A DNA stretch of 64,000 bases from positions 15,500,001 to 15,564,000 of the forward strand of contig NC_088858.1 in the NCBI RefSeq assembly GCF_963853765.1. Reading direction: 5' to 3'. How positions within the stretch are numbered: position 1 is the first letter of the stretch; every line of letters begins with the position of its first letter. The translations under genes and the position numbers were made by a program. Source of the DNA: Magallana gigas. Lineage: Eukaryota. The notes beneath the pieces were generated by a model. It was not told the DNA's origin and did not search any database. It saw nothing but the letters and a program-made list of their open reading frames with translations. Shown here piece by piece: positions 3,281 to 43,648 of the stretch.

Positions 3281-3287
3281 GACTAAA

Positions 3288-4268: not shown

Positions 4269-4277
4269 GATTTGTGT

Positions 4278-6694: not shown

Positions 6695-9339
6695 TCAAGG
6701 AGGCATAATAGAGGTTCTTCCCGCCTTAACCATGTGTGTCTTCTTAACACAAATATCATCTGGAACATGAACTTTATCTAAACAAGCATCTCCAATCAGG
6801 GCCCAGCCTAACGGAAGCTTCTGAGCATAGGGTGAGCTCTTTCCAACTCTTTGATCTATGACATGATGTGCTTCCACCAGATCACGTCCCAGCAGTAGTA
6901 ATATAGGTGCATCATTCAAAGGCGGAATCTCGGACGCAATATCTGCTAGGTGAGGGTAGTGAAGCGCAATTTCTGGGGTTCCTATTTCATCTCGATTACA
7001 AGGTATGCTGTCGCATTCAGTGACAACAGGTAAGTTCAGTGTTTGTGTTGAATCCCATGATTCAATGACTAGTCCATGAGCCTGTCTACCGCATGTTGGT
7101 ACAGTGCCGGAACATGAAGAAATTGTGTAACATTTTGGTTCAGAGTAAATTCTCAACATGTCAAAGAACTCACTGCGAGCAAGGGACCTGTTACTCTGAT
7201 CGTCAACAAGTGCATAAATCAAAATGGCATTCTCCTTTTCTCCTTGTCTGTACACTCGTACAAGCAACATTTTGGCACATGATTTACCAACAAATTGTTT
7301 CCCGCAAATTTGTAAACAACAGGCTGAAACTGATGAAACACTATTTGTTGTTATACTGTCTATGACACGTTGCTCCCCGCCATGCTCTTTGTATGGGTGA
7401 TCAGATTTGACATCAGTGGGGTGAAGTGCACTACAGTGTTCAGTATTATCACAAATGTCACATCTTAAATTCACTTTACAGTCCCTAGCCATGTGTTTTG
7501 AATTACAGCACCGAAAACAAATTCCTTCTTCCTTTAACAATCGTTTACGGTCTGCTAGCTTCTTGGATCTAAACACACGGCAATCCTGTAGTGAATGAGG
7601 TGTCTTACTGTTCAAGTGAATCAAACAAACCTGAGAGAGTTCCTTGCCCTGCTTTGACACAAATTCAGTCTTGTTTGTTCTCACTGACACACGCTCTCTG
7701 TTTCTGCTACCACTAAAGGGAATAGAAGTCACATGTTCTTTACTCTTTGGCTTGGACTGGACATCATACTGGAATCCTGGGTCATTGCGTATACGACTCA
7801 TTTCTTGGAGAAACTGAACTAAGAAAGTAAAGGGAGGATATGACACATTGTTTTTCTTTTTATAGTTTGAAGCTTGAGTTGTCCATTTGTCCTGCAAGTT
7901 GTAAGGAAGTTTGTTAATTATAGGTATGATTCCTGATGAAGAGTCAAAGTAGGAGAGAAGAGTTGAATATTTTGGGTTCTCTTTGGCTGCCTCAATCTCA
8001 GCTAGTATGTCTGCTAATTCATACATTCGTTTGTTTTCCTTTATTGTTAGTCGAGGAAATTGTTCCAGTTTGGTTTTCAAGGCTAATTCCACAAGCTCGG
8101 GTGAACCATATCGTTCTTCTAATCTCTCCCATATACGTTTCAAGGCTCTATCTGGGTATGCAGCATTTGCGGCTCTTATACTTAAAGCAAACTTAGTAGA
8201 TTCCGGTCCAAGGTACTTTGCTAGTAAATCGACTTCTTCAAATGGCGTTACTCCAAGTTCTTCTGCAATACTTTTGAAACTTGTTTTCCATGTAACAAAA
8301 ACTTCAGGCCGATCAGTAAATTTAGTGAACCTGGAAAATAGTAATTCCTTCTTCAATAGGAATTTGGTGAGGTCCCTAACAACATTGTCACCACCAGTCT
8401 GTTTCACTTCAAAGGGAGCTGCATTTGGGTTCAATGAGCTTTTATGTGTATCTTGGTATACTGGAAGTGGTCGAATGTCTCTTATTTCTGGTCTTTTGAC
8501 ACTGGTTTCCTCATCTTCAGGACAGCTTTCATATACATACTTTGCCGTCAGTTGACTCCTGTCGACTGGTTCCTGCAGCAGTGATGGCTCTGGGGAGACA
8601 TGCCTACTTCCCATTTCTGTTTCCTCAAGTGCTCTTACTTCTGCTGCGGCAATTGCAAACTTTCGCTCTTGTTCTAGCAGTAGCATTTCAGCATCTAGCT
8701 CTTCTTTCTGTCGAGTCTGTTCTGCCTTATGCTTTGCTTCCTTTTCCTCCAAGGATGCCTTCTGTTTTCTCAACATCAGCTCTCTTGCTTCGTATTGTAG
8801 ACGGGCTCGTTGCGCTTCAACTTCCATCTTCTTTTTCGCTAGGAAACTCCCATTTGTAGAAGGCTCTCCAACCTCTGATCTAGTGAGTAGACCTGAACGA
8901 CTTGAACCTCTCTGTGATAGTCGTTCAGTTGCTTCAATTCTTGCCTCTCTGATACTTCTGCTTAACTCCTTCATAATGTCTCTACATTTGATTTGTAGAA
9001 CTTCTTGTACTCTTAATTCTGAAATACTGTCCTCTGTGTTTGTCCTATCAAGGAAAGCTAAGAAGTCCTCAGATTCATGTGCATGTTTGTTTTCAATTCT
9101 TGAAGCTCTTTATCCAATGTTCTCAGAGATTTAAAATCTAATTGTGTTTTATATTCATCAAGTTTCACAGCCATATCTTCAATATCAGACCAAATTGTAT
9201 CACATTTATAGAAATATTTCTTAACGGTTTCTTCATATAACACTTGACCCTTTTCTGTCTTTCTCTTTACTCTACCCCTACTTTCAAGTTCATCATGTTC
9301 ATCATGTTCAACACTGACTTCTTTTTCTGCATCAGCCAT
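6695..9339 (-). pseudogene. Gag-protease segment
   Basis: Probable start MADAEKE..RKTEKG..Y at 9339 with at least two frameshifts around 9090-8990. The ORF 8974-6695 has CCHC-type knuckles (CFRCCNSKHMARDC) and the protease motif ALVDDQSNRS. An in-frame TGA at 6695-6697 interrupts the frame that continues into RT. Confidence 0.88.
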
Positions 9340-10045
9340 TTTGTTTCAATGTTGCACACACTATATATACACTGTACACATGATATTCAAGATATTTGTT
9401 GATATATATATGTATATAATGCAATCTTAATAAGCAAATATATACACCAAAAAATCTGTTTCAAAATGCTGCGTACAATAGCAAAAGATTAGATGCTGCA
9501 CACAATAGCAAAAAATAGGTGTGCCATATGACAGTGAACACAAATACGACAATCTCTAAATACACGTGAAGATAAATACCAAGTGTTACTGTTACTCGTA
9601 GAAGAAAAACTCAAACCATGCAAGCACACTAAATGGCAAATGCCTAGACAATGAATATCAACCCTTATTAAAAAATATAGATGATAACTGATAATTTCAC
9701 TGTTCAATGTTCAACAGTTCATGTGTAATAACACTATCACTATAAGTTCATACGCTATATATGTGTATGTACAAATTAACACTCAAATGCACCGGTAAAT
9801 TCAGGCACTGCAAGTCAACATTTACATACAAACACTAGTCAATAGTTCATGTTATTACACCACGGAATGTATCGCGGAATGCACAACGGAATGTTCTACG
9901 GACAGTGTCCAACACTATAGACGGAAAGGACTGCACGCCCCCAGGTAGGCAGGTAGGTATGGTCTGCATGCCATCGTCCAAAGGTGTAGTAAGGGTAGGC
10001 CCAGCCTCAGCAAGAAGGATCCAATCCAACAAACGATTTATTTAC

Positions 10046-10446
10046 TATGCTGTCTCAGTCCCAGACTGGTGTTGCAGCCAGTAACAAATAACCTCGAAAC
10101 CATTGTAGTTCATCATAAACTTTTAATAGTAATGGCTTCACAAAAGGTAAATAACTGAAAAATGAATAAACAAACAATAAGTTCCCACTTAACCCGAATT
10201 TTCTCTGATAATTTACGATACCCGGCAAACAACACACATTTAAAGCAAATCTAAATATTTCATTGCATAACAATAGAGTTAAACAAACACTTACATCGCT
10301 GTGGCACCTCACTGGTGTTCAAAACAAACAAAAAACACAGACCTCACTCGCACATGCCATGGCCATGCTGAGTTGCAGAGTCCCTGACGTAATAAACAAA
10401 ACCGTCCAGGTTGGAATACGGATTTCCGAAAAAGCGTGACAGCACA
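10046..10446 (-). repeat. 5' LTR of the BEL/Pao element (401 bp)
   Basis: Near-identical to 2871-3270 and followed by the TSD TTATC. Confidence 0.93.
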
Positions 10447-16996: not shown

Positions 16997-17916
16997 ATGA
17001 TCCGCGCATGTGTTTTCCTTAGCATTTTGGCATTTGCCGTATCTGATTACGATAAGAAATACCATTATGGCACCAACATCTACCGTCCAGGAGGGTTTGG
17101 TAGAGGAAATCTTGGATTAAGTGGTCTTGGCGGGGGAAATCTTGGATTAAGTGGTCTTGGCGGAGGAAATCTTGGATTTAATGGTATTGGCGGAGGAAAT
17201 CTTGGATTTAATGGTATTGGCGGAGGACAATTTGGCTTAAGTGGTCTTGGCGGAGGAAATCTTGGATTAGGTAGTCTTGGCGGAGGAAATCTTGGATTAG
17301 GTAGTCTTGGCGGAGGAAATCTTGGATTAGGTAGTCTTGGCGGAGGAAATCTTGGATTAAGTGGTCTTGGCGGAGGGAATCTTGGCTTAAGTGGTCTTGG
17401 CGGAGGAAATCTTGGATTAAGTGGTCTTGGCGGAGGAAACCTTGGGTTTAGTGGTAACTTTGGTGGACTCCAAGTGGCAAGACGTTCATCTTTTGGGCCA
17501 GGAAGTGCAGCCTCGGCAAGTGCTGCTTCTTCTGGTGGATCTGCTGCTGCTTCAGCTGCTGCATCATCTTCATCCTTAGGTGGCTCAATATTCCCAGGAA
17601 GGGTTAACTCTTTTCCCCAACCGTACAGATTCCCTCAACAATATGGCTTTCCTGGCGGACAATATTACTTTCCTGGCGTACAATATGGATTAACCGGACA
17701 AGATGGCTTTTCTGGACAATATGGCTTCCCCGGACAAATCGGCTTTCCTGGACCGTTCAACTTTCCTGGTCAACAATCCCAGTACGGGATCAGTCCTCTC
17801 CCAAAGAGAAAGGTAAGAACAATGAAATCAATTTTTATTAAAACCTTTGTGTAAAAATTCGGACACATCAACATTTATTTGATATATATTTCATTCTTTT
17901 ATTACAGGTTTACTAA
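16997..17916 (+). CDS. Secreted Gly-rich silk-like protein, cluster gene 2 (274 aa; coding exons 16997-17812 and 17908-17916)
   Basis: Acceptor TTGCAG at 16994 and ATG at 16997. Signal peptide [16 protein letters not shown] then DYDKK. Twelve 10-aa [10 protein letters not shown]-type repeats, one Ala/Ser module and FPGQYG repeats. Donor at 17813 and acceptor at 17907 give GTT TAC TAA, so the C-terminus is KRKVY*. Confidence 0.9.
17099..17458 (+). repeat. 30-bp coding minisatellite, 12 units
   Basis: Consensus GGCGGAGGAAATCTTGGATTAAGTGGTCTT encoding [10 protein letters not shown] and variants. Confidence 0.9.
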
Positions 17917-20923: not shown

Positions 20924-23520
20924 CAATCTTAAGATGTACATTTGACCATACCTTGGCTACTGACATTACCCATTGTCGGTGTTCCATTTTAGGATTTTCA
21001 TGATTTTGAGAAGTTCCCTTTTTTGGCAAGATTTTTTTTTAGACGAGGTTGCCCCTACCCCCACCCACACACACACTTTCAAAAACGATGGTACGTGCCT
21101 TTTTGAAAGTCAAATTATTCAATTGGCGTAATTTGGTATAATATGACACAGCATAAATTGCTAAATGTACGTCATTTACTTTTCCACCTTCTAAAACTTT
21201 ACGTTACCATGCAAAAGAGCAGTACCGGAGTGACAGTGAAGGGGTTTACTATTTTATTTATCATTTCTAGAAACTTTTATCGTTATATGTCTAGAATTGT
21301 ATAATTCAATCATTTACTTGGCATTCAGTTTTATTGCTCATAAGCTGATTAATTTTATGTACCTGAAGAACAAACACCTTAAAAAAGAGAAAGAAATGAT
21401 AATGATTTATTATTCAACACAAATTAAAATAAGAAAGGATGCATTGTGGTAACTAAATGAATAGTACAGGTGTACTTTATTCTTGTTCTTCTTCAAAATA
21501 TGCAGAATTAAAGAATTTGCTAGCCGACTTGGATCGTCTTTTTTTGCTTTAACAGCAATCTACAAAAAATAGAATATCATATATTACTATTCTCTTGTAC
21601 AATGTTTCCGCAATATCCTAGTAGTGGATATTGCATTACATAAACTGTTAAGGATATATACATATATTTGGGTGAATCGTGTGCAAAACTGAGAGAAAAT
21701 CTTCATATTTACTATCAGAAAACTGTGCATACTAAATGAGCATTCTTAATTTTAAGTCAGTTCCTAATAATTAGCAAAAGTATCAGGGAATAAATTTTCA
21801 AGATGATATCAAATATAATCAAGTAGATGAAACTAAATTTTATGCATGTGCAAGAAAATTAGAAAGCAGCACGACTTTAAAAGAAGACATAATTTCAAAG
21901 AACATATTACGATTGGTCAGGTAACATTGTGTGTGTATATATTGGAAAACATTTAGAACATTTAGAAAATAACATATATTCCATCAAGGGAAATGATCTT
22001 GGCATTGGTCATAATTATCAAAGTTTTGATTACATATTATCGCTGAATGAATGAAATCTTGCTTACACCTTGATTTGTGCTGAGTAATGGTATATTGCTG
22101 ATTCTGAATTATGTGAGTTAATGTCTCTGGTGTGATCCATAACTTGTCTCGTCTGAAATGCATGTCACCATGCAAAGTCCCTGGGTCCTGTAAATAAACT
22201 CCACTATACTGTTACTTCAAGATAACATCGAATTCTATATTGTGTTTTGGTTGAAAGGCATTTCTGCAAAATCAAGATATTGTACAATAATATTTAACCA
22301 TGATCACACCAAATGCCATGCCACTTTATTAAAATGTTTATGAAGAGGTACATTGAGAAATGCGCAAACTCAAATTTATACTAACCTATTGAAAAAAATA
22401 ATTTTTTTTACTGCCACACACAAAATATGATATAAACATATTTTTCTTGATTTTTTCTACCAGGTATTCAAAATGTGAAAATTCATTAAGGGAATTGACA
22501 GCTTTATAGTAGCAAAACATTATTTTTAATTTTTATGACTTAAATGAAATGAATCTAAGCATTAAATTTATCATAAATATATTATGCGCATTTCTATCGA
22601 ACACAGCAACCAAAAAATACAGTTAGAAAGATAGCCATATATTCTGTTTTCAAATGTTAACATATATCAATTTAATTTTTACTGTCCAGTGTGTTTAACA
22701 AATCATTCTTTAGATACACGAATAAATCTGATGCTGACTCTTTAAAACCGTCAGAGTTGTAATTACAATTATCCAATGTTTCTATAGTATATAAATAAAC
22801 GCTAAGTCTAGATAACATACATGTACAAATTTATCCATACATATTTTCATGAACCTATTGCTTCATCCCCGATTCAAATTTTTCTAAATATTTTTTTTTG
22901 CTTTTAACAACCTGTTAATGTATCTTTAAATCACCATATCCGGTTATTTCATAAAAAGGGTGAACAATTAACTTTTTACATAGATGCATACTGAGTATAT
23001 TGTTTTAAAAATTTTGTTCAGAAGAAAATGTTTATCAAGTTTATAACGGGGACTTCACACAGTAATGTTAATAAAAAATAAGCACGCAAGCAAAATATTA
23101 CATAAACAAGAGTTTAAATAACTTTATTCTGACATCTGTAAATTATCTATATACATTTACTTTACCTTTCCATGCAATTTAAAGAAATATGCATAAAAAT
23201 TCAACTTTTTCGTGATTCAAACCCCATCTAAAATGTAAGACACGGTTTAAATCCATTCTGACTGCGTTACCTCGACTAATCTAGACATGAACTACAGAAG
23301 GTATTAATGATTTTTTCCAAAAGTCAGATTTATTAGGAATATGCCTCTTTGATACAAAAATCGGAAATGGCAGTTTTCATGAAATTGTTTTACTCTAAAC
23401 GTTAAGTTTAAATTAATTTTGTTTCAAAGAAGCAGTTTTTCACAATGATGAGGATTCTTTTAAAAATAGCGTGAAATCTGGCACAATCATAAATCGGTTA
23501 TGGATATCTCTAAAATCCTC

Positions 23521-30000: not shown

Positions 30001-31987
30001 GCGACTAATTTATGTCATTCAAAATGACACTTTGTAATTAACCGTCACTTAATTAGTGGTTACGATGACAGGTTTCAGTAGGACATTATTCATAATCGTC
30101 CAGACGTTTCTACTCAGTTTCAAACCCAATCAGTCATAAATTATCATGATCATCACCTTCTCTAAAACATTGGTTAATGGTTTTTTAAACTTAGCTTATT
30201 CATGTAAATTTAAAAAATTTTAGTCGAGCGAAAAAGATATAAACACTAAATGAAGGCATTATTATATAATTAATAAAAAAGGTATTCAACAAATGTTAAA
30301 ACCAATAAATTGGAGAATCTGAAAAATACCATAGAAATCAATTTATAAAAAAGTTGTTCATAAATGTTTTTAAAAAATATTAGCTCGATGCATTTAAACG
30401 TATCTACACTTCCTAACTTACGCTCGCATTTGTAAAATATCTTGTTATGTATACCCCATGTACAATGGATATGGTTTGAGAGAAACAATAAAATTACCAT
30501 TCATTGATAATAATATAAAATGAACACATTAAAAAGAATCCACACATGATAAAAACCAATGATATAAAACAAAATACGCCTTTTTAAAATGAAGTCATGT
30601 TTTAAAGATATGTATTATGTTGATTTTTATTTTAAAAAAGATTATATATCTTAACATTAAAACTTAATAATAATATTTGAAAGAATATGTAGTTTCATAA
30701 TAAATTAAAAAGTGGTGACTTTTTTTTTTAATTTTGAGATTCCCCCATTCTTTCAATTCCACAGGAGTTTCTTTGATCCTATACGTTCAAAACGTGCACA
30801 TTTATGTGTCCATCTCTACGAGCGTTCGTCGATACAATTTTTTGTTATGTTCTAATTTGATTTACCCTCAATGCTTCGATAAGAAAATCTTTTTTAAAAT
30901 CGTATGTAATAACGAGCGAGAGTTTACTAGTTTTATAATAAGACATATACGAATTTGTAAAATATTTTGATAGCAAAACTATTGATAATGTCCCTAATTT
31001 TTTAGTTTGTTTTTAATTGACATTAAGAATCGCAAATTGGAATTGTGATTAAAGTGGTCCATAACACCCCCAACAACACTAAATCCACTAAACTGTTTGA
31101 TTCCTGACATCATTAAAGATCTTCAATCTTAATTAAGTAGAAAATTTTTTTAAAATTTGCTCTTTCGATTCACACTATTCATTTATTTAAAAGGATCTTA
31201 AATATGTTTAATGTTTAATAAACAAATTAAAAGCGAATATTTTTGTATTTAACAAAATTTCAAAATTTTAATGTTTATTTTAATTTCATGTTACAGTTTT
31301 GGGACAAGGTAAACTGTTTTTAAATGAGCTGTAAAACATTAAGTGAAACAATAATTTCCCCTTCCTCATTTAACACCGTTTAAGAAGAACTTTCAAGAAA
31401 GAACAAATCCATAACCAAATTATATAGCAATATTTTCCCCCTAATGCGTAGTTGAAAAGAACTGTCAAAAACAAAAGGATAACTTACCCTCTAATTTGTT
31501 CAGGACAAACTTTCTATCGTATTCTGTTTTTTTAACATAACGAATAAGTATTTTCTAGATCTGAACCATTTAAAAAATATTGTATGTGTGTCAACAGTTT
31601 TTTATAAGGACAGTTAGGTTAAAGGTGACTATAAACTTTTTGTAATCTCACAATTCTGCGCTTTGTTTCCATAAATATATTAGTAACAACCAATGAATAT
31701 TAATTCAATTATCAAACAAACAAGATAACTGTGCTCTGAATTTGATGACTAAGAGGAAGTGGAATTATAATGTGGTTGAGGAGGAGCATGGTCCAATATA
31801 ACGGGAATATGATTTATATAACTATATCAAAAATAGATTATACAAGATTAAAAAAAGAAAAGTCATTACCTTTCATGAAATAATCATCATGATCAAAACG
31901 TATGATTAGTTTGTCTCAAATTTGCATCATAATCACGTTCCACTGTTTTATTTTTAAGAATTAGTTTGTTTTCATGCTTTACATTGA

Positions 31988-32015
31988 TGACGTATGTTTT
32001 TGAAAATATATAAAA
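31988..32015 (+). promoter_or_regulatory. Promoter of cluster gene 3: TGACGT plus TATA box
   Basis: TGACGTAT at 31988-31995, TATAAAA at 32009-32015, AGGAC at 32039. Exon 1 donor CAG|GTAAGA at 32078. Confidence 0.72.
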
Positions 32016-32788
32016 GGGATACGGTTAAACAAAACAGTAGGACTTTTAGTTTAAGAGCCTCCAGATCCACACAGCAGGTAAGAAAGAAATACACCTCTCG
32101 TTTACATTTCGCAGCTTCTAAATCGGATTTTTTTTAAACTGTATTAGTCTCCCTAAGAAGAAAAGTTCTGTGCTTATGCTTTCTTTATTTTCTATACTTA
32201 ATAATAGTTTAAAGCTTAACAAATAATATCGAACAATATAGAGAAGATCTGATGGTTATATTAAATTGTTGACCACCCAGCTACCATAAACGGGGCTAAG
32301 TAAATTAAGAAACGCCAAAACTTCAAATTCAATAGTCGATTGCTCATATTCCTATTTTTTCTGTCGAACAATAGTTCAAATGAAGCCATTCGTTTAATTA
32401 CATTATAAGTATATTTAAACTACTTTTCAATAAAAAAAATCAATAATAATAGACTCATATATATCTGATAAATCATTGTAGATGATTAAATGTAAGTTCA
32501 GATATTATTTATTGTCAACGATTTTTTTTATAAACCCAAGTAGTAAGGAAAATAGCGGCTTTTTAGTACTTAGTAGAATGAATTTAACGGTATCTATGTT
32601 AAATACTTTTATCTCATGAAATGTGCACCTAAATACGGTTCCAACAATATGCTTTAAGAATAGTTGAATGATGTATTACCGAGAAAGCACTATCACAAGC
32701 CCTATCCTAAATTACAACATTGAATAAAAATTGGCAAAATATACACATCTTTTTTTTAGACCCAACTATTTGTCTTCCATTTGTAGTC

Positions 32789-33956
32789 ATGATCAAGCAA
32801 ATCTTCCTCCTCTGCTCCTTGGCCAGTGTTTTTGCCGATTCTGAAAAATACGGTGGTTGCAATGGCTACGGATGTGCCGTTGGTGTAAACCAGTACGGCC
32901 CAGGGGGTGCATCCAGTACCTTCTTTTCCTCTGGAGGAATTGGCGGACAGCAAGTATTGGGTGGACTTGAACATCAATTGCTCGGTGGATCTTTAGGAGG
33001 TCTAGGACCCATTGCTGCCGGTCCAGGTGGCGCTGCTGCTTCAAGTGCCGCTGCTTCCAGTGGGCGCTTTGGAGGCTCTGCTGCATCATCAGCAGCAGCT
33101 AGTGGAGCACCAGGTTTAAACTTTGCAGGACCCGTTGGTTTTGGAAACAATGGTTTCAATGGTTTCAATAGCTTTGACGATGGCAACTTTGGCTTGAATA
33201 ATTTTGGATTGAATTCCGCCGGGCCCGGGGCTGCTGCCTCATCAAGTGCCGCTGCTGCCGGTGGACCTTTTGGTGGAGCTGCTTCCTCCTCAGCCGCTGC
33301 ATCAGGTGCTCCTGGTTTCGGTAACAACGTCGGTTTCCCAGGTCTTCAAGGATTCCAAGGTGGTTTCCAAGGATTCCAAGGTGGCCTTCAAGGATTTCAA
33401 GGTGGTCTCCAAGGATTCCAAGGTGGTCTTCAAGGATTCCAAGGTGGCCTTCAAGGATTTCAAGGCGGTCTCCAAGGATTCCAAGGTGGTTTCCAGGGAG
33501 TACAAGGGTTCCAGGGATTCCCAGGCGTCCCATCCTTTGGATTTCCAGGGAGTGCTGCAGCCGGAGCCGCGGCTTCTAGTGACGACGGATCAGCCTCCGC
33601 ATCCTCTGCTGCCTCTACTGGTGCCCAAGCCTCCGTTTCTGGTTCAAATTTCCCAGGTATTGGACGACCTTATCCATTCCCCGGAAGTGTACTTCCTACC
33701 TATCCCGTTGTACCGCAAGTTTACCCAGGAGTCCCCACTTACCCACTTCCAGGCGTATCCACTTACCCAGTCCCAGGGGCGCCCGTAACATCTTATCCAT
33801 TTCCCTCGCGTAGACCATTCAGACCGATTGGAAGGGTATGTATCTTATTTATACGGCATCTTCATGTCTTACTCTAAGCAGAATCTTTATTTTTCAATTC
33901 TATTAAGCATTCAAATGTAAACAAACTTTTTTTTTCTATTTCAGAAGGTATATTGA
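32789..33956 (+). CDS. Secreted Gly/Ala/Gln-rich silk-like protein, cluster gene 3 (352 aa; coding exons 32789-33835 and 33945-33956)
   Basis: Acceptor TTGTAG at 32786. Signal peptide MIKQIFLLCSLASVFA then DSEKYGGCNGYGC. Three Ala/Ser modules, GGLQGFQ heptads and a PGVPTYP region. Donor at 33836 and acceptor at 33944 give AAG GTA TAT TGA (RKVY*). Confidence 0.9.
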
Positions 33957-34593
33957 GAAAATTTGTCCAGAAATACTCAATCCAGGAATACTTTGATACC
34001 ATCTCATATTGTTGTTGTTGTGTATCTGTTTTAAAGCAATCAAATTATTAAATAAATAATACTTGAATTGTTGTGCTTTGTATCATCACCATTTAATGCT
34101 AAACAAAAGGTTTATTGTGGTTTAAACGTTTTTCGTTTAGCATCAATTCCTTATTAATCCAGTTAACGCGAAATCTTATGTTCAAAGATGTAACAATTTT
34201 TATGAATAGGACCATTGTCCTCGAACATTCATATCATCTAAATTGTGCAATTACCTATTTTCTGAAATATTGATTCCTCACAGTGTATGAAAAGGGTTTG
34301 GTTGTTGGAACGCAGTAAACGTTGGATATAAAATGCGCATTTGCCAGTCATGAAACAAGGGGTACTAATCTAAATTATTGTGAAGGTAGACGCCTGAATG
34401 AAAACTAATTTTGATGGGACCTTTACTATTTCCAGCCATTCACAGTCAGTTTTGTGAATTTCACGTATTTTTCAAAGTAATTTCATTCAAATAATTGACA
34501 ATTCTCATATGGCTCGTCGTAGTGACACCAGAAAATCTATTCAAGCAAAACGAGATTACGCTTTTTTTAAAACCAAAACCTTAAGACAGCATG

Positions 34594-35405
34594 AGGACCC
34601 GTTGGTTTTGGAAACAATGGTTTCAATAGCTTTGACGATGGCAGCTTTGGCTTGAATAATTTTGGATTCAATTCCGGTGGAGCTGCTTCTGCAGCCTCTA
34701 GCGCTGCCGCCGCCGGTGGACCTTTTGGTGGAGCTGCTTCCTCCTCAGCCGCTGCATCAGGTGCTCCTGGTTTTGGTTTGAATGTTGGTTTCCCAGGTCT
34801 CCTAGGATTCCAAGGTGGTCTCCAAGGATTCCAAGGTGGTCTCCAAGGATTCCAAGGTGGTCTCCAAGGATTCCAAAGTGGTCTCCAAGGATTCCTAGGT
34901 GGTTTCCAAGGAGTACAAGGTGGTTTCCAAGGAGTACAAGGGTTCCAGGGATTCCCAGGCGTCCCATCCTTTGGATTTCCTGGAGGTGCTGCAGCCGGAG
35001 CCGCGGCTTCTAGTGACGACGGATCAGCCTCCGCCTCCTCTGCTGCTTCTACTGGCGCCCAAGCCTCCGTTTCAAGTTCAAAATTTCCAGGAGTCCCCAC
35101 TTACCCAATTCCAGGCGTGCCCACTTATCCACTTCCAGGCGTACCCACCTACCCAGTTCCAGGCGTACCCACTTACCCAGTTCCAGGCGTGCCCACTTAC
35201 CCACGTCGTGGCGTACCTAGTTACCCACTTCCAGGCGTACCTTTACCCCCTTTTTCAGGTCAACCACGTAGACCATTTGGAAAGGTATGTATCACTCAAT
35301 TTTCGAACAACAATTGCAAATGTAACTCTTAGCTACATCTTTATTTTGCAGCCATGCAATTAAAGGTTTAACATTTTCCTTTTTCTCTTTCAGAGGGTAT
35401 ATTGA
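34594..35405 (+). pseudogene. 5'-truncated paralog (cluster gene 4): 3' two-thirds of exon 2, intron, last exon and polyA signal
   Basis: Starts abruptly at AGGACCCGTTGG, mid exon 2, with an in-frame TGA at the junction and no promoter, exon 1 or signal peptide. Open for 230 codons to a donor at 35285. Acceptor at 35393 gives AGG GTA TAT TGA (KRVY*). AATAAA at 35482. Confidence 0.85.
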
Positions 35406-36375
35406 GAAGTTGAGAATAAACCAATCCAGAAATACACTGATCACCATTTGCAATATTGTTGTTGTGTGTCTGTTATTAAGCAATAAAAAAAAATAACAAT
35501 TTCTACTAGACTTTTTGTTGCTTGTTGATACATTGTTTAAATGCTTTTAATTTACTGACAATACGGCTTACTGTGGTTTTATCAGTTTTTTTCTGTTTTG
35601 CGGTAAAGTGTGATGATTTTATTTGTTCAGCCGTAGTTGAGGCGATCAACGAAATTAAATTTTCAGTAATAAATCGAATTCACATCAATTTTAATGAATT
35701 TTGTAAGACAATTTTAAACAAAGCTTCGTATAATTAAAACTGAGCATTGTACATTATACAAGACGATTAAATGCTTATGGTGTATGAAAAGGAATTTATT
35801 ACTGGAAAACAGCGAATTTTACAATGTATATTAAATGTGTACTGTGGCATGGAGCGCAAATACTCTTTACTGTAAAAGAGGACGCTCGTTTAATACGGCA
35901 AGTTTATAATCCTTTGCATTTTCGGTCAACTATAGGCCGATCAATTTGGAGTATTTTTGTAGAAGTTTCTTCACACTTCTAGCATGTTAAAATAATCTCA
36001 CTCTATAACAGAGATACACTAAATCTGAAGACATCAAATATAAAACTTAATAATTTTTGTTTTTACTTTGCACGCAATGAATTATTTGGTGAAAATAACC
36101 AATGGAAGCAAACTGAAAAAATTAAAAACATAAATCTTCATTAAACACACAGAATGCTTGACTGGCATTTTGGAATGACCTTTGAATTAAAATTAAATCG
36201 ACAGTTTCTATTTAATTAGGTTGGCTCACTACAGTACACCTCTTTGAAATAGTTTCTCACAGAAATTTACATGATTCTGATGGAAATGGTTTATAAAAGT
36301 ATAGAAATCGATGGAAATTTTGGATTAAAAAATAATTTTTTCAAGCATTTAGTTCAGTCAATGTGAACAAAATCC

Positions 36376-36430
36376 CAAGGCGGGTTGAAACTCATGACCT
36401 GCGGTTTACAAGCCCGATACTTTAACCACT
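36376..36430 (-). mobile_element. tRNA-derived SINE head fragment
   Basis: Minus strand AGTGGTTAAAGTATCGGGCTTGTAAACCGCAGGTCATGAGTTTCAACCCGCC has degenerate A-box and B-box-like segments but no complete cloverleaf. Confidence 0.45.
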
Positions 36431-36870
36431 ATTTATATAATGTATTTCTACTCTTATGTTTTTCCTATAAAATGATCATACAAGAATTATAATATTGCGG
36501 AATCGTCAAGAAAACGGCCACACAGTGTTGTCTCATTGAATATGACATGTCCAGTATAATTGATTTTTGGATTGAGGTGAAATAGTCGTAAAGTACCCAG
36601 ATAAAGTCTTTGGTTAAGAAGTAAATTACCCCCAAAAAATTATCATAATCATAAAAATTATTGATATACTGTCTTGAAACATTTTAAGATATGATTTGTG
36701 TAGCTTAATAAAAATAGCTGAAATTGAAACCCCTCGAAAACCATGTCAACCGACGCAATGCAGAGGTTGACAATGGTTTTCGAGAGGTGTCAATTTCAAA
36801 TGTTTCTGAAATGACTTGAATTCTACGGAGAACTGTACGCGCATAATGTACGCGCATGTAACAATTCGTT

Positions 36871-37240
36871 TTATTATACTTTCATGTTAAATACTGAAAT
36901 CTGATTGTTGTAGACGCAGTTGGTAATCCGTTCTATTACCCTTAGCGTTAGCAACACACTTGACAACGGGTAACACAACCCAAATTGTTACATGCGCGTA
37001 AATTATGCGCGTACGGTTAACAGTAGAATTCACTTCATTTCTATATAAAAACAGTAAAATTTTCTTTAAAATTAAGACATTCAGTATAATAAAATGAATA
37101 GTGCCTGTTTGGGAGGGTAACTGTTGAAATTGACACCCCTCGAAAACCACTGTCAACCTCAGCATCGCGTCGGTTGATAATGGTTGTCTTGGGGTGTCAA
37201 TTTCAACAGTTACCCTCCCAAACAGGCACTATTTATATAA
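36871..37240 (+). mobile_element. Non-autonomous interspersed repeat with a ~80-bp subterminal hairpin; family unassigned
   Basis: A second, truncated copy lies at 59565-59857 with long near-identity (AAATACTGAAATCTGATT..AGACGCAGTTGGTAATCCGTTCTATTACCC). An inverted copy of the hairpin lies at 36720-36800. Confidence 0.7.
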
Positions 37241-38769
37241 TGGTACCCGTTGCCAAGTATGTTGCAAAGGCTGAGGGTGACAGAACAGATTATTAACGAG
37301 ACTGGGGGTGGCTGCCATTTTAAAGTGCTTTTATCTGTATACAAAAAAGATTTTAACTTCAATGTTCTATAACTCTTACATCGTACTGAAAATTTCTTTT
37401 GAAAGAAATGGATATGATGGTATTAAAGCATTATTTAAAGAGTCAATTGATGGTAAACAAAGGGTTATAAAATGCAAAAAATAATTTCAGCTGTTTTTCA
37501 GCATTTTCTAACCTTTTAAAGGGAGGTAACTTTTAAAACTCTATATATTTTGTAATATTTTCCTTTTATTTCTTTTTTTTTTTTTATTTCACTATCGATT
37601 TTTTTAAATGCTCAATCTTTATTGCACATGCATTGATTATTATTATGTTAAAATTTGGAAATAATCTTGTGGCTACTTTTTATTGTTTTACATATTTGGA
37701 TTTGTATGACATATATATTTTTGGTAAAATTGTGATATTTTTCTTTTTAACAAATAATGGTTAGTTTTTCTGTGTTAATTTTTTGTGATGTTATTGCTAT
37801 GTTTTTTGCCTTTATTTATATTTCTTATATTTTTCATAATTTTTTTTTACATAATGTGCAGTTTTTCTTCAGTTGCAATAAATGATAAAATAACGATGAT
37901 TGTGATGTGGTCTTTTATATTAAAATGTAAACTAAGATTATATGAAACATGTTTGCACATTTGGTGAATCTTGGAGACATTTTTGGACCCCCAGCCTCCT
38001 TAACTGCGTTCAGATTTCAGCTTTCAACATGAAAGAATAATAATAACCAATGTTTAGTAAAGAAAAAAATCTATATACATGTATTTTACATTTCAAATTT
38101 TAGTATCTGCCTATAAATTTATATACATCTCTTCTTTAAAAGGAGATCAATCCAGTTTAATAAAGGACACGGTCATGGTTTTAATCAGATACGACGTACA
38201 TGACATGACAAAGGCATTACAGCTTGCACTAACGAATAAATAAGTAGAAAAATAAAATTAATACACGGGTTGATGTAATAAAAAAGAAGTAATGTTCTTA
38301 ATGAGAACAATTACTTTATCCTAGCTTTTTTCAATGAAAACAGTTTCGAAACAGACGTAGGCTCTCTTTCAAATTAATCTTTAAGAAAATTTCATAAATC
38401 ATCCATGAGTAAAAGAATACATGAATTTATCAAAATCTGATTGAAAAGAACCATGGGGTAGAGTATATACGAGGAATGTTCCAAAAGTAATAACACGTAG
38501 CTGTTTTCACCCACATTTATTAATGGAATTTATCTCTAAGGATAAATTCATTGATACAAGGAACAGCAACCTTATCTTAAGTCGTGATCCTAATAAGGAT
38601 CAAGTTAGTGTTAGCTTAACCATCGGGTTTGGTGTTTACAATTAATATCGGGTTCGTGCTCAAAGCTTGGAAATATGTGGTCAACCAACTGCTTCAAGGG
38701 TCTACCTAACTTAGCCATTAACCCGCTTTGAGCAAAGCGCTATTTATCTACTATTTGGTCCATCGATTA

Positions 38770-39281
38770 TTTATTTACTCAATCCATCGATTGTCAATTA
38801 TGATTGATAGATTGATTGATTATGAATTGTTTGATTCAATAATTATATTGCTAATGTCATTGATTTATATTGATTGTCTAAACAGTTTGATTGATTGATT
38901 ATTTATAAATTGATTGATTGAACAATTATATTGTCAATGTGATGATTCATAATCATTGATTGAACAATTGATTGTTGATGTGATGATTGATTGATTGATT
39001 AATTGTAAAGCCATATACCTGCTCACCAATTTGGTGGCAGGTCGGTTGAATGGCATGTCAAACGTTGAATTATTCGATCGTTTCCATTTGCATTGTATAA
39101 ATATCTATCTGTATTGTATAAATTTCTATCTGTATTCTATAATTTTCCATTTGTATTGTATAAATATTCAGTTCAATTGTATGATTTTTCTATTTGTATT
39201 CTATAATATACCATTTGTATTCTATAATTTTCCATTTGTATTCTTTAATTTTACATTTGTATTCTACAATTTTACATTTGT
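38770..39281. repeat. Degenerate (GATT)-rich tract followed by a ~21-bp minisatellite
   Basis: TTGA/GATT repeats at about 38770-39000. About ten TTTCCATTTGTATTCTATAAT-like units at about 39080-39281. Confidence 0.7.
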
Positions 39282-40418
39282 TTAAATATATAGACTTGCT
39301 ACTGACCAGGAACATTTGTTATAAATGATGAAGTGTCATTGTATAAAAAAATTCTTGGAACTTCCCTTGTGTATCGATTTCAATTATATCTTTTTGACAG
39401 GTATGTGTATTCCATTTTTCAAAACTAACGGAAACAATAACCTGGTACAGACTTTGGCTGCTGGTCATTATTGCTGTACGAAAAAAATGGTCTAACAGGC
39501 CGTAAGGCTACATTTCGTCATATACACAAGAAACTCTACAAATTACAGCGTTATATTTTGTTAAATTTTGGACTGTATAGCGGAATTTCTAAACACATTC
39601 TATGAAAAAAGTCAGAACAAAAGAATCAAAGGACATTTATCAACAAATATCCTTACTTTGCATACCTCTAAAATGTTTTGAAACACCCGTATAAAACTGT
39701 ATGGTTTATTTTACCTTTATAAATTGGGAATCTCTATTTGTATGTGATTTAAATATTTTTTATATTCCGAGGACGGTTAACATGCTTAAAAAACTCTCTG
39801 AGGCAAGCAAAGTGTCAACATCAGAACTGTAACTCCCAGACTTGTCAACCCGAATTTTTTCGAGGAGCTTCCGCCCTGCACTTAATATTTGTTTTATTCA
39901 AATAAACAATAAAAACATGTTAAAGACAATCAGTCTACTGTATTCTTATTTTATTTTTAGAAAAAATGTCAGTAATTTCTAGACCTGATTCAGCCGAAAA
40001 TACAATGTGCGTCGACAGTTTTCTGTTAGGACATTCCGGTTAAAGGTGACTATAAAACATTCTGTAAGCCGAAAATCCACCGTTTCTTCCTATAGAACTA
40101 AAAATATACTCTTCACAACCAATAAATATCAACTCACTTATAAAATTACCAAGAATATTCGGTCTGTATATGATTAGTAGAAGGAAGTGTAATTATAATT
40201 ATGTGGTTGAGGAGGAACAGAGTCCATTAAGACTTGAATTTCACATAAATAACCATATTAAAAATAGATTATACGCGATTAAAACAGAAACGTAATCACT
40301 TTTATTTGTAAAATGATCATGATTAAAAAATGCATGACCAGTTTGTCTTTAATTTGTATGCAATCACATACCTCTGTTTTAATGATAAAGATAAGTTTAT
40401 TTTTATGCTAGATAATGA

Positions 40419-40445
40419 TGACGTTGTTTTTGAAAATATATAAAA
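40419..40445 (+). promoter_or_regulatory. Promoter of cluster gene 5: TGACGT plus TATA box
   Basis: TGACGT at 40419-40424, TATAAAA at 40439-40445, AGGAC at 40469. Exon 1 donor CAG|GTAAGA at 40510. Homology to the gene 3 promoter extends about 400 bp upstream. Confidence 0.72.
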
Positions 40446-41028
40446 GGGAAAAGGTGAAACAAAATAGTAGGACTTGTAGTTTAAGCGCCTCCAGATCCAC
40501 ACACAACAGGTAAGAAAGATCTACATCTAATCGTTTGTACATTGATGAAGCCGACCACCGAGCAATTATACTTTTCTCCGTAAATAAAAACCAACTTGCC
40601 CCTCTCCTTTTTAAAAAAATAATTGAGTTTGTTTACCTATACAAAATGTTTCTACTTCAGATATTTGCATGAATATATACCTTTTTAAATTAAAACCATT
40701 TCAAATCATTTGAAATGAATACAGGTACTTTCGATTGTACATAAGGGATCATCTGATTTTGTCACTAGGTTTATCCTACAACACTGGCTAATTTTATGTT
40801 AAAAAGTATGATAAAAAATACCTCTGTTTTAAACAACCCTCTCCTTTGAATGTATCGCTAAAACAGTGTCCTAATTATGCTTTAAAAGAATTGTTAGCAT
40901 TTTCAAAAAATCTAACCTGGGAAATATAATCACAAAAATTTTTTTTAATATCGTCTAAACAAGAAAATAATAATGCAACATTAGACAAACATGTTTAAAA
41001 AACCCATCTTTTTTCTCTACTTGTAGTC

Positions 41029-42154
41029 ATGATCAAACAAATCATCCTTCTGTGTTCCGTGGCCAGTGTATTTGCCGATACTGAAAAATATGGTGGCTGC
41101 AATGGCTATGGATGTGCCGTTGGTGTAAACCAGTACGGCCCAGGGGGTGCATCCAGTACCTTCTTTTCCTCTGGAGGAATTGGCGGACAGCAAGTATTGG
41201 GTGGACTTGAACATCAATTGCTCGGTGGATCTTTAGGAGGTCTAGGACCCATTGCTGCCGGTCCAGGTGGCGCTGCTGCTTCAAGTGCCGCTGCTTCCAG
41301 TGGGCGCTTTGGAGGCTCTGCTGCATCATCAGCAGCAGCTAGTGGAGCACCAGGTTTAAACTTTGCAGGACCCGTTGGTTTTGGAAACAATGGTTTCAAT
41401 GGTTTCAATAGCTTTGACGATGGCAACTTTGGCTTGAATAATTTTGGATTGAATTCCGCCGGGCCCGGGGCTGCTGCCTCATCAAGTGCCGCTGCTGCCG
41501 GTGGACCTTTTGGTGGAGCTGCTTCCTCCTCAGCCGCTGCATCAGGTGCTCCTGGTTTCGGTAACAACGTCGGTTTCCCAGGTCTCCAAGGATTCCAAGG
41601 TGGTTTCCAAGGATTCCAAGGTGGTCTCCAAGGATTCCAAGGTGGCCTTCAAGGATTTCAAGGCGGTCTCCAAGGATTCCAAGGTGGTTTCCAGGGAGTA
41701 CAAGGGTTCCAGGGATTCCCAGGCGTCCCATCCTTTGGATTTCCAGGGAGTGCTGCAGCCGGAGCCGCGGCTTCTAGTGACGACGGATCAGCCTCCGCAT
41801 CCTCTGCTGCCTCTACTGGTGCCCAAGCCTCCGTTTCTGGTTCAAATTTCCCAGGTATTGGACGACCTTATCCATTCCCCGGAAGTGTACTTCCTACCTA
41901 TCCCGTTGTACCGCAAATTTATCCAGGAGTCCCCACTTACCCACTTCCAGGCGTATCCACTTACCCAGTCCCAGGGGCGCCCGTAACATCTTATCCATTT
42001 CCCTCGCATAGACCATTCAGACCGATTGGAAGGGTATGTATCTTATTTATACAGCATCTGCATGTCTTACTCTAAGCAGAATCTTTATTTATCAATTCTA
42101 TTAAGCATTCAAATGTCAACGAAATTTTTTTTTCTATTTCAGAAGGTATATTGA
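41029..42154 (+). CDS. Secreted Gly/Ala/Gln-rich silk-like protein, cluster gene 5 (338 aa; coding exons 41029-42033 and 42143-42154)
   Basis: Signal peptide MIKQIILLCSVASVFA. The body is nearly identical to gene 3 but has two fewer heptads. Donor at 42034 and acceptor at 42142 give AAG GTA TAT TGA (RKVY*). AATAAA at 42249. Confidence 0.9.
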
Positions 42155-43648
42155 GAAAATTTGTCCAGAAATACTCAATCCAGGAATACTTTGATACCCT
42201 CTCATATTGTTGTTGTTGTGTATCTGTTTTAAAGCAATCAAATTATTAAATAAATAATACTTGAATTGTTGTGCTTTGTATCATCACCATTTAATACAAA
42301 ACTAAAGGTTTATTGTGGTAAACGTTTTTCTTTTAGCATCAATTCCTTATTAATCCAGTTAACGCGAAATCTTATGTTCAAAGATGTAACAATTTTTATG
42401 AATAGGACCATTGTCCTCGAACATTCATATCATCTAACTTGCGCAATAACCTATTTTCTGAAATATTGACTCCTCACAGTGTATGAAAAGGGTATGGTTG
42501 TTGGAACGCAGTAAACGTTGGATATAAAATGCGCATTTGCCAGTCATGAAACAAGGAGTACTAATCTAATTTAATCTGAAGGTAGACGCCTGAATGAAAA
42601 CTAATTTTGATGGGATCTTCACTATTTCCAGCCATTCACAGTCAATTTTGTGAATTTCTCGTATTTTTCAGAGTAATTTCATTCAAAAAATTGACAATTC
42701 TCATATGGATCGTCGTAGTGACACCAGAAAATCTATTCAAGCAAAACGAGATTACGCTTTTTTAAAACCAAAACCTAAAGACAGCATGTCTAATGATATA
42801 TTTTTATATAATGTACATAGTCTGCACACAATTATTGCAATTACCAAATGAAAGGAAACAGAGAATTATACTTTCAGCCTGAACTGAATTGCTGAACTAT
42901 CTGATTAAACTAAAATGTCTAAAAACTCAAGTTTGCAACTCAATGAAACATTTAGATCGCTAGACATAAAAAAACAAGAATAGAATAATTTAATAATATA
43001 AACAACTCAAAACGCAAGTATATAAACACATTTACTTTTCAAAACTTCAATTCAATATTTAAACTTTTTATAAGCAGTAACGACTATAGAAGTATGCATT
43101 ACGAAATATCAATTCTTGTTCAGCGAAAAGCCGTCGAAGCATTTGAAGCATTACGACGTTTTTTGTTCTATCTTAACCCTTTAAAAACGTCAAAATTGCA
43201 TATAACCTCTATTTTGATTTTACCTTATACATTCTAACATGAAACTAAACTTTATAGGACTTGAGAATATGGTGGATAAGTATTTAAGCTTCCGTTTCTT
43301 TAACAAAGAATCTTGCAATTTACGGTACAGTAGAATTCTCTCTTTTTTAAATAATAAACCTGTTTTCCTAACAAAACAATTTTTATGGAATTATGATTAA
43401 AAATATCAAAGCAAATGTAAAAAAAAATTCAAAAATGTAGTGATGAAACATTAATTAGTATTCCTAGGCTTACTTATAACTACAGACTCTGAGAAAATTT
43501 GTAGCTTAGACATATTAATACCTTGTGCTAAGCCTAACCCTTTTCTAACGTATTACTAAGCGTAATATTACAGCTGTACGTAAGCAAAATGAAGATATCG
43601 ATTACATTGATGGTAAGACAGTATCATAACAAAGTTAATCCATTGTCA

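What the first reader, a model, noticed from the sequence alone, without database searches (positions are those of the whole stretch)
32789..35405. Gene 3 appears to be a chimera: a copy of gene 5 invaded an ancestral gene and pushed its 3' part out as the fragment
Genes 3 and 5 differ at 11 positions in the first 81 coding nt and have diverged promoters and intron 1. From 32870 they are identical for about 475 nt and remain nearly identical through the last intron and about 640 bp of 3' flank (32870-34593 vs 41110-42788). At 34593 the flank ends (AAGACAGCATG, continuing TCTAATG after gene 5) and joins, with no evident microhomology, the middle of exon 2 of a more diverged paralog (gene 4). 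The simplest reading is that the 5' end of gene 3 plus gene 4 was one ancestral gene. A break would then have been repaired by copying from gene 5 with homologous entry and non-homologous exit, creating a new promoter/body combination and an orphan 3' fragment.
Basis: partly seen in the sequence, partly recalled or inferred. Interest (0 to 1): 0.75.

Follow-up and report, generated by a model that had tools for sequence, protein, structure and literature searches.

The report
Paralog copy pasted into oyster gene
In a tandem cluster of oyster genes for secreted glycine/alanine-rich proteins, about 1.45 kb of one gene was copied into the middle of its older neighbour, making a hybrid gene and stranding the neighbour's original 3' part as a dead fragment; this is a well-preserved natural example of a known DNA-repair accident.

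Summary
In this oyster chromosome, 32760-34593 matches gene 5 (41002-42788) with about 2% substitutions. The homology stops at 34593/42788. At 34594 a 5'-truncated paralog fragment (gene 4) begins mid-exon, in register with 33127; it is 75% identical overall and 85-87% near its start.

An independent gene-3 allele keeps non-gene-5 sequence up to 33126, with 19 differences in 32887-33126 and none in 33127-33316. It is seen in Logan contig L008, in the older-assembly protein XP_019921347.1, and as variant contigs in three runs. 33126 is the base before the point where gene 4 resumes.

So the primary event pasted gene 5's 41367-42788 into an older paralog at a clean break (33126|33127). The left join is homologous, the right join has 0-1 nt of microhomology, and no recipient base was lost. 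The reference haplotype later underwent an ordinary conversion (32870-33126 at least).

Gene 4 evolved under purifying selection (omega 0.25). It now has no start codon and showed only low, unspliced coverage in the one RNA run examined. An independent haplotype carries the junction.

This fits one-sided invasion (failed SDSA) plus end joining, a known kind of event.

The parts
31497..32108 (+). Upstream block of the recipient locus ('A'). It is an old paralog of gene 5's upstream block 39918-40543.
   Evidence: 74% identity, colinear. This is the same order of divergence as gene 4 vs gene 5. The offset of about 8.4 kb fits an old tandem duplication of the whole gene unit.
32789..32869 (+). 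First 27 codons of gene 3 (signal peptide). This is recipient-lineage (A) sequence in all alleles seen.
   Evidence: 11 differences from gene 5 in 81 nt. Contig L008 shares gene 3's state at 10 of these 11 sites.
32870..33126 (+). Secondary gene-conversion tract of the reference haplotype. It is identical to gene 5 here but A-type in other alleles. The right edge of the tract cannot be seen.
   Evidence: 0 differences from gene 5 in the reference. L008 has 19 differences here. XP_019921347.1 shows the same A-type residues. A variant 158-nt contig over 32998-33155 occurs in runs X1 and X15, and the same variant letters appear in X3. Run X2 has only the reference type.
33127..34593 (+). Block X, the pasted copy of gene 5 41367-42788. 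It holds the rest of exon 2, the last intron (33836-33944), the last exon (33945-33956, KVY-stop), the 3' UTR and about 640 nt of flank.
   Evidence: 2 substitutions plus a 42-nt repeat indel in 33127-33718, and 3.5% divergence in 33719-34593. Intron removal 33835/33945 is seen in an RNA contig. These are the only two copies of this flank in the 564-Mb genome.
34593..34594 (+). Non-homologous exit junction: gene-5-type flank joined to the middle of exon 2 of the recipient gene.
   Evidence: Homology to gene 5 ends at 34593 and homology to 33127 onward starts at 34594. Microhomology is 0-1 nt. The junction creates an in-frame TGA (34592-34594). An RNA-run contig from a different haplotype (10 mismatches, 3 gaps) runs 29 nt across it, which is as far as a k=31 contig can go.
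34594..35405 (+). Gene 4 (block Z), the orphaned original 3' part of the recipient gene. It holds codons homologous to 114-349 (34595-35284), an intron with GT..AG (35285-35393) and a last exon RVY-stop (35394-35405). Weak flank homology runs on to about 35837.
   Evidence: The frame is open over 230 codons despite many in-frame indels. dS is 0.36, dN 0.09 and omega 0.25 vs gene 5. There is no in-frame ATG. In RNA run X15 there is no depth at 34869-35019 and only a low-depth, unspliced contig over 35144-35481.
41029..42154 (+). Gene 5, the donor paralog ('B'), intact. CDS is 41029-42033 plus 42143-42154.
   Evidence: tblastn and translation.
41367..42788 (+). Block Y, the stretch of gene 5 that was copied. 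The donor's flank continues unbroken past 42788.

Best explanation
Two old tandem paralogs, A and B (B = gene 5), sat about 8.2 kb apart. A suffered a break in exon 2 between the bases now at 33126 and 34594. The left end invaded the homologous position of B and primed synthesis. Synthesis ran through the rest of B's exon 2, its last intron, last exon, 3' UTR and about 640 nt of flank, 1.42 kb in all, to 42788.

The new strand was B-type, only about 85% like A's other end. It was therefore not annealed back as in normal synthesis-dependent strand annealing (SDSA). It was end-joined to the untouched right end with 0-1 nt of microhomology.

The product is A(promoter to codon 113) + B(codon 114 to flank) = gene 3. 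It is followed at once by A's own codon-114-to-end piece, gene 4, which has no start codon and no promoter. B was left unchanged. Later, in the lineage of the reference haplotype, an ordinary conversion from gene 5 also overwrote 32870-33126.

Shown: the anatomy, the allele series, the past selective constraint on gene 4, and the reality of the junction. Inferred: that the lesion was a double-strand break (a replication template switch gives the same product), and that homeology caused the failure of annealing.
For: 1. The right boundary of gene-3/gene-5 identity coincides to the base with the start of gene 4.
2. In unconverted alleles, the left boundary of gene-5-like sequence coincides to the base with the point homologous to gene 4's first base. 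L008 has 19 differences in 32887-33126, the last at 33126, and 0 in 33127-33316. All 19 falling on the left has P = 3e-5.
3. That allele is not a contig artefact. XP_019921347.1, from an older C. gigas assembly, has the same A-type residues and then runs gene-5-like to KVY. The same variant letters appear in runs X1, X3 and X15, and as a separate variant contig in X1 and X15. L008 carries gene 3's own upstream sequence, and the genome has no closer locus.
4. The 5' and 3' pieces of A show matching old divergence from B. A's 5' CDS vs B has dS 0.21 and omega 0.26. Gene 4 vs B has dS 0.36 and omega 0.25. The upstream block is 74% identical. Block X vs Y has dS 0.017.
5. Gene 4 keeps an open frame, both splice signals and its stop codon through many in-frame indels. 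It was therefore part of a working gene until recently.
6. The donor is intact, and its flank does not resume downstream of gene 4.
7. The junction lies in a 29-contig chromosome-scale assembly and in an RNA-run contig of a different haplotype.
8. Published mechanism: failed SDSA intermediates that are end-joined give duplications of the copied stretch, 0.1-10 kb with a median of about 1 kb, in C. elegans (PMC8654963). One-sided invasion is described by Belmaaza & Chartrand 1994 and Puchta 1998, both seen only in reference lists.
Against: - No uninterrupted A gene (5' of gene 3 running directly into gene 4) was found in any haplotype or species (metagenome scans 40, 41). The ancestral state is therefore inferred, not observed.
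- Short-read contigs (k=31) cannot bridge the 34 nt shared by X and Z. The RNA contig crosses the junction by 29 nt, just under the tool's 31-nt bridging criterion.
- X-Y divergence is uneven: 0.4% in 33127-33718 vs 3.5% in 33719-34593, Fisher P = 3e-5. This needs an extra assumption, either later conversion or a donor allele unlike the reference gene 5.
- dS of the 5' piece (0.21) is lower than that of gene 4 (0.36), though not significantly (P = 0.07).
- Sequence alone cannot tell a double-strand break from a replication template switch.
Confidence: 0.8

Rival explanations
1. An old internal tandem duplication of 33127-34593 within gene A made gene 3 plus the gene 4 fragment. Much later, gene conversion between gene 3 and gene 5, in either direction, homogenised the first copy.
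For: The topology is that of a tandem duplication: a full gene followed by a fragment that starts at the position homologous to 33127. Conversion between genes 3 and 5 does occur, as the reference tract 32870-33126 shows.
Against: The conversion tract would have to start within 34 nt of the duplication's left edge and end within 11 nt of its right edge. A homology-bounded tract cannot run to the very last base of homology. A dead-on-arrival fragment with dS 0.36 would not be expected to keep omega 0.25, an open frame through many indels and intact splice signals.
Confidence: 0.07
2. The same copy-paste product arose not from a double-strand break but from a replication-fork template switch (FoSTeS/MMBIR type). 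The nascent strand left A at 33126, copied B by homology, and switched back to A.
For: The product is identical. The 0-1 nt microhomology at the return junction fits either route.
Against: A template switch has no reason to return to exactly the base it left (33127). For a two-ended break, the other end is that base by construction. This is an argument from parsimony only.
Confidence: 0.15
3. Assembly artefact: the junction is a false join of two haplotypes or of collapsed paralogs.
For: Genes 3 and 5 are nearly identical over 1.7 kb, which invites collapse. No DNA contig that spans the junction was among the listed rows.
Against: A contig from an independent run, of a different haplotype, joins the spliced gene 3 3' end and flank to AGGACCC... 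up to 34622. The assembly is chromosome-scale, 564 Mb in 29 contigs. There are no Ns within 10 kb. DNA contig depth is roughly double over 32755-34868 and single over both flanks and gene 4 in X1 and X2 (the tool warns that depth is only indicative). An older assembly gives the same chimeric protein.
Confidence: 0.03
4. Genes 3 and 5 are recent whole-gene duplicates, and the gene 4 fragment was inserted secondarily into gene 3's 3' flank from a third paralog.
For: Gene 4 sits inside what would be the flank.
Against: Gene 5's flank beyond 42788 does not resume anywhere in 35300-39900. The upstream regions and first 81 coding nt of genes 3 and 5 are old-diverged, not recent. Unconverted alleles are non-gene-5-like up to 33126. 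No third locus in the genome is a source for gene 4.
Confidence: 0.02

Closest known systems
One-sided invasion, or coupled homologous/non-homologous break repair (Belmaaza & Chartrand 1994; Puchta 1998; both cited from the reference lists read)
   Same: Entry is homologous and in register on one side. The exit is an illegitimate junction on the other. The donor is unchanged, and donor sequence beyond the homology (here 3' flank) is carried into the recipient.
   Different: Those cases are induced breaks in cultured or somatic cells with engineered substrates. This one is a spontaneous, inherited event between natural tandem paralogs, read from alleles. The break itself is inferred.
Tandem duplications from failed SDSA intermediates that are end-joined (C. 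elegans helq-1 and brc-1 mutants; PMC8654963)
   Same: [quoted passage not shown] The copied stretch is therefore duplicated. The size (1.4 kb) lies in the reported 0.1-10 kb range, and the junction has minimal microhomology.
   Different: There the template is the sister chromatid, so the two copies are identical. Here the template was a diverged paralog 8.2 kb away, so the 'duplication' is a chimera: X resembles the donor, not the displaced copy Z. No repair mutant is implied. Homeology itself may have blocked annealing (inference).
Ordinary ectopic (non-allelic) gene conversion between tandem paralogs
   Same: The secondary tract of the reference haplotype (32870-33126 at least) is exactly this: no length change, and both ends lie in homology.
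   Different: The primary event adds 1,467 nt and has a non-homologous end, which conversion in the strict sense does not produce.
Oyster 'spidroin-2-like' / 'elastin' automatic annotations (Saccostrea proteins P0004 and P0006; C. gigas XP_019921347.1)
   Same: Secreted, Gly/Ala/Ser-rich, with poly-Ala/Ser blocks, GFQGG repeats and a Pro/Tyr-rich tail. The N-terminus (signal peptide plus the GGCNGYGC motif) is shared across oyster genera.
   Different: There is no Pfam domain at all, and no spidroin terminal domains. The names reflect composition, not homology. The function of the family was not tested here.

Membership tests
One-sided invasion / failed-SDSA plus end-joining product | The entry side is homologous and in register between donor and recipient. 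| tested here: met
   In unconverted alleles, A-type sequence runs to 33126 and gene-5-type sequence starts at 33127 with no indel or frame change.
One-sided invasion / failed-SDSA plus end-joining product | The exit junction has no homology, or only a few nt of microhomology, and carries donor sequence that the recipient lacks at that place. | tested here: met
   Gene-5-type 3' flank is joined to mid-exon sequence at 34593|34594 with 0-1 nt of microhomology.
One-sided invasion / failed-SDSA plus end-joining product | The recipient's sequence resumes at the break, giving a duplication-like structure with the two sides of one break flanking the copied stretch. | tested here: met
   The last A-type base on the left is 33126. 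The first base of gene 4 is homologous to 33127.
One-sided invasion / failed-SDSA plus end-joining product | The donor is left intact (copied, not moved). | tested here: met
   Gene 5 is complete, and its flank continues past 42788.
One-sided invasion / failed-SDSA plus end-joining product | The event was initiated by a double-strand break. | not testable with these tools
   Sequence alone cannot separate a break from a fork template switch.
Simple tandem duplication | The two adjacent copies are each other's closest relatives. | tested here: not met
   X is about 98% identical to gene 5 (substitutions only) but only 75-87% identical to the adjacent copy Z.
Classical ectopic gene conversion (primary event) | The tract is bounded by homology on both sides, with no net insertion. 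| tested here: not met
   1,467 nt were added and the right end is non-homologous. The feature is met only for the secondary tract 32870-33126.
Unequal crossover (NAHR) chimera | The about 8.2 kb between the paralogs is duplicated or deleted, and flanks of the new copy are near-identical. | tested here: not met
   The upstream block is only 74% identical and the rest is unalignable. No gene-4-like piece lies 8.2 kb upstream.
Spidroin (true spider-silk protein family) | Conserved spidroin N- and C-terminal domains. | tested here: not met
   There is no Pfam family hit for genes 3 or 5 at E up to 1. Gene 4 has only a sub-threshold Cornifin match on its Pro-rich repeats.

The most novel reading that the evidence does not exclude
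The insertion may be young enough to still segregate in oyster populations alongside the uninterrupted ancestral gene (5' of gene 3 running straight into gene 4). There would then be three allele classes: ancestral, primary chimera, and chimera plus secondary conversion. That would make a natural, datable series of germline one-sided-invasion repair. It would also swap the C-terminal Pro/Tyr-repeat domain of a highly expressed secreted structural protein between alleles, with possible phenotypic effect. Alternatively, gene 4 may still be used as an alternative 3' end through read-through and splicing.
Probability: 0.15. Interest if true: 0.6.

Novelty: new member of a known kind. Interest (0 to 1): 0.45.

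Why it matters
Repair events that start by homology and end by end joining are well known from reporters and from cancer or mutant genomes. Inherited natural examples are rarely this legible. Here the donor, the recipient's two break sides, the copied tract and the junction are all preserved to the base. Other individuals still carry the primary product, while the reference carries a later conversion on top of it.

The locus shows a concrete route by which tandem paralogs produce a new promoter, N-terminus and C-terminus combination and a pseudogene fragment in a single step. It also suggests that a diverged template can itself push SDSA into end joining.

For annotation, gene 4 should be called a 5'-truncated pseudogene fragment. 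Gene 3 alleles differ by a conversion tract, which matters for read mapping and expression counts in this highly expressed family.

Tried and rejected
- **Protein searches for an uninterrupted ancestral gene.** I queried with gene 4's translation, whole and C-terminal part, against the word-indexed database and exhaustively against representatives. Only low-complexity and Pro-repeat matches came back, and the top hit P0008 is unrelated.
- **Exact look-ups.** P0003 and P0007 are not on record.
- **JGI metagenome scans.** A gene-4-specific 36-mer and a gene-3-specific 36-mer found nothing.
- **Locus L007 (P0002).** It comes from a more distant oyster, about 66% identical, which is too far to inform on this event.
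- **Tail of contig L008 (696-960).** I considered it as a polymorphic transposon insertion in exon 2. It matches the interior, not an end, of a dispersed repeat. A contig chimera or rearrangement is more likely, so only L008 1-695 was used, and only where XP_019921347.1 corroborates it.
- **Structure at the exit point.** A 5-bp hairpin AGACA-GCA-TGTCT straddles 42788, but folding energy is no better than shuffles (z = -0.12). It was rejected as an explanation.
- **Bacterial-type promoter and terminator scan**. It is irrelevant to a eukaryote and nothing was found.
- **Flank homology beyond the 42788-equivalent, downstream of gene 4.** Divergence is too high to see anything past about 35837, so this could not separate the models.
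- **Contig depth.** It was used only as a weak indication, as the tool advises.
Full report
**What the locus is**

The window is part of contig 6 (15,500,001-15,564,000) of a 564-Mb, 29-contig oyster assembly. Public runs that hold the stretch are labelled as oyster. An older-assembly protein that matches it is from Crassostrea gigas.

The window carries a tandem cluster of genes for secreted Gly/Ala/Ser-rich proteins with GFQGG repeats and a Pro/Tyr-rich tail:
- gene 1, about 1537-2256;
- gene 2, about 16997-17770;
- gene 3, 32789-33835 plus 33945-33956;
- the gene 4 fragment, 34595-35284 plus 35394-35405;
- gene 5, 41029-42033 plus 42143-42154.

No Pfam family matches them. Relatives in Saccostrea are automatically named 'spidroin-2-like' and the C. 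gigas model 'elastin'. These names reflect composition only.

**Check of the observation**

- Self-blast gives 32760-34593 = 41002-42788, ending exactly at 34593/42788. It also gives 34594-35523 = 33127-34078 (75.2%) and = 41367-42276 (74.8%).
- The difference map shows 11 substitutions in the first 81 coding nt. It shows none in 32870-33345, then a 42-nt repeat-number indel with two SNPs. It shows none in 33431-33718, then 31 substitutions and two small indels in 33719-34593.
- After ...GACAGCATG, gene 5 continues TCTAATG and gene 3 continues AGGACCCGTTGG.
- Upstream, 31497-32108 matches 39918-40543 at only 74%, and the rest up to the ATG is essentially unalignable.
- The flank exists in only these two copies in the genome.

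**The key new evidence: an allele series**

A protein search with gene 4 returned P0001, encoded on Logan contig L008 from another sequencing run. L008 positions 1-695 align to 32616-33316, including gene 3's own upstream sequence, and no other locus in the genome is closer.

Site by site:
- L008 shares gene 3's state at 10 of the 11 gene-3/gene-5 differences in 32797-32869.
- It then differs from the reference gene 3, which there equals gene 5, at 19 sites between 32887 and 33126.
- It shows no difference at all in 33127-33316.

The last difference, at 33126, is the base immediately before the position homologous to the first base of gene 4 (33127 corresponds to 34594). The chance that all 19 differences fall to the left is 3e-5. 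With the left-hand rate, zero differences on the right has P = 8e-7.

This allele is not an artefact of one contig:
- P0001's cluster mate is XP_019921347.1 from an older C. gigas assembly. After 69 mis-joined N-terminal residues (exons at 16997-17095 and 21902-22006), it shows the same A-type residues up to '...APGFSFG'. It then runs gene-5-like to the KVY end.
- A separate variant contig over 32998-33155 (12 mismatches) occurs in runs X1 and X15, and the same variant letters appear in X3.
- Run X2 has only the reference type.

So two gene-3 allele classes circulate. One is A-type up to 33126. The other, which includes the reference, is overwritten by gene 5 from 32870.

**Reconstruction**

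The primary product was A[... to 33126] + copy of gene 5 [41367-42788] + A[33127-equivalent onward] = gene 4.
- The left transition is in register and homologous.
- The right junction has no homology, apart from one shared G when the A-type allele is used.
- No recipient base is missing or duplicated, so the two flanks of the insert are the two sides of one clean break.
- The reference's identity to gene 5 from 32870 is a later, ordinary conversion tract.

**Was gene 4 really the 3' end of a working gene?**

Gene 4's 230 codons are open and differ from X and Y by several indels, all in frame. It keeps GT..AG and a last exon of three codons and a stop (RVY-stop, against KVY-stop in genes 3 and 5).

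| Comparison | dS | dN | omega |
|---|---|---|---|
| Gene 4 vs gene 5 | 0.36 | 0.09 | 0.25 |
| A-type 5' piece (L008) vs gene 5 | 0.21 | 0.054 | 0.26 |
| X vs Y | 0.017 | 0.004 | 0.24 |

The two old pieces have similar omega, and their dS values are not significantly different (P = 0.07).

Both pieces therefore look like parts of one old, constrained paralog of gene 5, and the pasted block is far younger. Today gene 4 has an in-frame TGA made by the junction and no in-frame ATG. In RNA run X15 it has no depth at 34869-35019 and only a low-depth, unspliced contig over 35144-35481. Gene 3 there is deep and spliced at 33835/33945.

**Is the junction real?**

- RNA-run contig 14 of X15 is spliced at the last intron and continues through the flank to 34622, 29 nt past the junction.
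- It carries 10 mismatches and 3 gaps relative to the reference, so it comes from another haplotype.
- It stops where a k=31 graph must branch, because the first 34 nt of gene 4 are identical to 33127-33160. Twenty-nine nt is as far as such a contig can reach, although it is below the tool's 31-nt bridging rule.
- The assembly is chromosome-scale, and the nearest Ns are at 45396 and beyond.
- DNA contig depth is about double over 32755-34868 and single on both sides (indicative only).

I put mis-assembly at about 3%.

**Rivals**

- *Old internal tandem duplication followed by conversion.* The tract would have to begin within 34 nt and end within 11 nt of the duplication's edges. A homology-bounded tract would have to reach the last base of homology. 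A dead fragment would have to keep omega 0.25 at dS 0.36.
- *Recent whole-gene duplicates with a secondary insertion of gene 4.* This is contradicted by the old-diverged 5' ends and upstream blocks, and by the failure of gene 5's flank to resume after gene 4.
- *Unequal crossover.* It predicts near-identical 8-kb units, which are absent.
- *Replication template switch.* It gives the same product and cannot be excluded. The exact return to the departure base is more natural for a two-ended break.

**Mechanism and known relatives**

The anatomy is that of one-sided invasion, in which homologous recombination at one end is coupled to illegitimate joining at the other. It is described by Belmaaza & Chartrand 1994 and Puchta 1998, both seen in the reference lists of PMC4888836 and PMC9299229.

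The closest worked-out model is the origin of 0.1-10 kb tandem duplications in C. elegans helq-1 and brc-1 mutants. [quoted passage not shown] Here the template was a paralog rather than the sister chromatid, so the 'duplicate' is donor-type and the displaced original is the diverged one.

I infer, without a test, that the B-type new strand could not anneal stably to A's other end. It is about 85-87% identical to that end over the first 200-300 nt. That would explain why synthesis ran on for 1.4 kb and ended in end joining.

**Loose ends**

X-Y divergence is uneven, 0.4% vs 3.5% (Fisher P = 3e-5). Even allowing for coding constraint, the 5' part of X is too clean. Either later conversions refreshed it, or the donor was a gene 5 allele unlike the reference one.

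Several X-Y differences in the flank are polymorphic. The X15 junction-bearing contig has gene 5's state at about seven of them, so the true age is younger than 3.5% suggests. Whether an uninterrupted ancestral allele still exists could not be tested with k=31 contigs.

**Verdict**

The kind of event is known, and the example is unusually clean. Interest is moderate.

Noticed in passing
window 2870-10446 (- strand): A BEL/Pao-type LTR retrotransposon lies between genes 1 and 2. Its direct terminal repeats are 2870-3270 and 10045-10446 (290 nt at 100% identity, then 125 nt at 96%). Its ORFs carry Pao retrotransposon peptidase (PF05380) and DUF5641. It looks like a very young insertion.
   Followed up: partly
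L008:696-960 (joined to window position 33316/33317): The last 265 nt of the Logan contig are an interior piece of a dispersed repeat with at least 14 copies at 95-98% identity on many chromosomes. The join to gene 3's exon is probably a contig chimera, or possibly a rearranged allele that would truncate the protein (P0001 ends ...GAPGQLDMFLLL).
   Followed up: partly
window 33366-33407 vs 41605/41606: Genes 3 and 5 differ by 42 nt, two 21-nt GFQGGLQ units, in the repeat array. XP_019921347.1 has an intermediate repeat count. Repeat number is therefore variable among copies and alleles.
   Followed up: no
window 16997-17095 and 21902-22006: The older gene model XP_019921347.1 ('elastin') fuses gene 2's signal-peptide exon and an exon at 21902-22006 onto gene 3. 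This is a mis-joined annotation spanning about 16 kb.
   Followed up: partly
window 17037-17545: Gene 2 contains an array of about 12 or more 30-nt tandem repeats (10-residue units) at 60-89% identity.
   Followed up: no
window 32151-32301 and 36389-36430: Very high summed contig depth and many loose ends appear in all DNA runs here, up to thousands-fold at 36389-36430. These are dispersed repeats flanking the gene 3 / gene 4 unit.
   Followed up: no
window 37014-37163 and 59709-59858: A 150-nt direct repeat at 91% identity lies 22.7 kb apart. It is probably a short dispersed element.
   Followed up: no
G000:C6:15492026-15492104 (about 8 kb before the window): A further weak match to the family's Ala/Ser-rich block suggests the gene cluster extends upstream of the window.
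   Followed up: no
window 42779-42791: A small perfect hairpin, AGACA-GCA-TGTCT, straddles the point where copying of gene 5's flank stopped. It is not significant against shuffles.
   Followed up: yes
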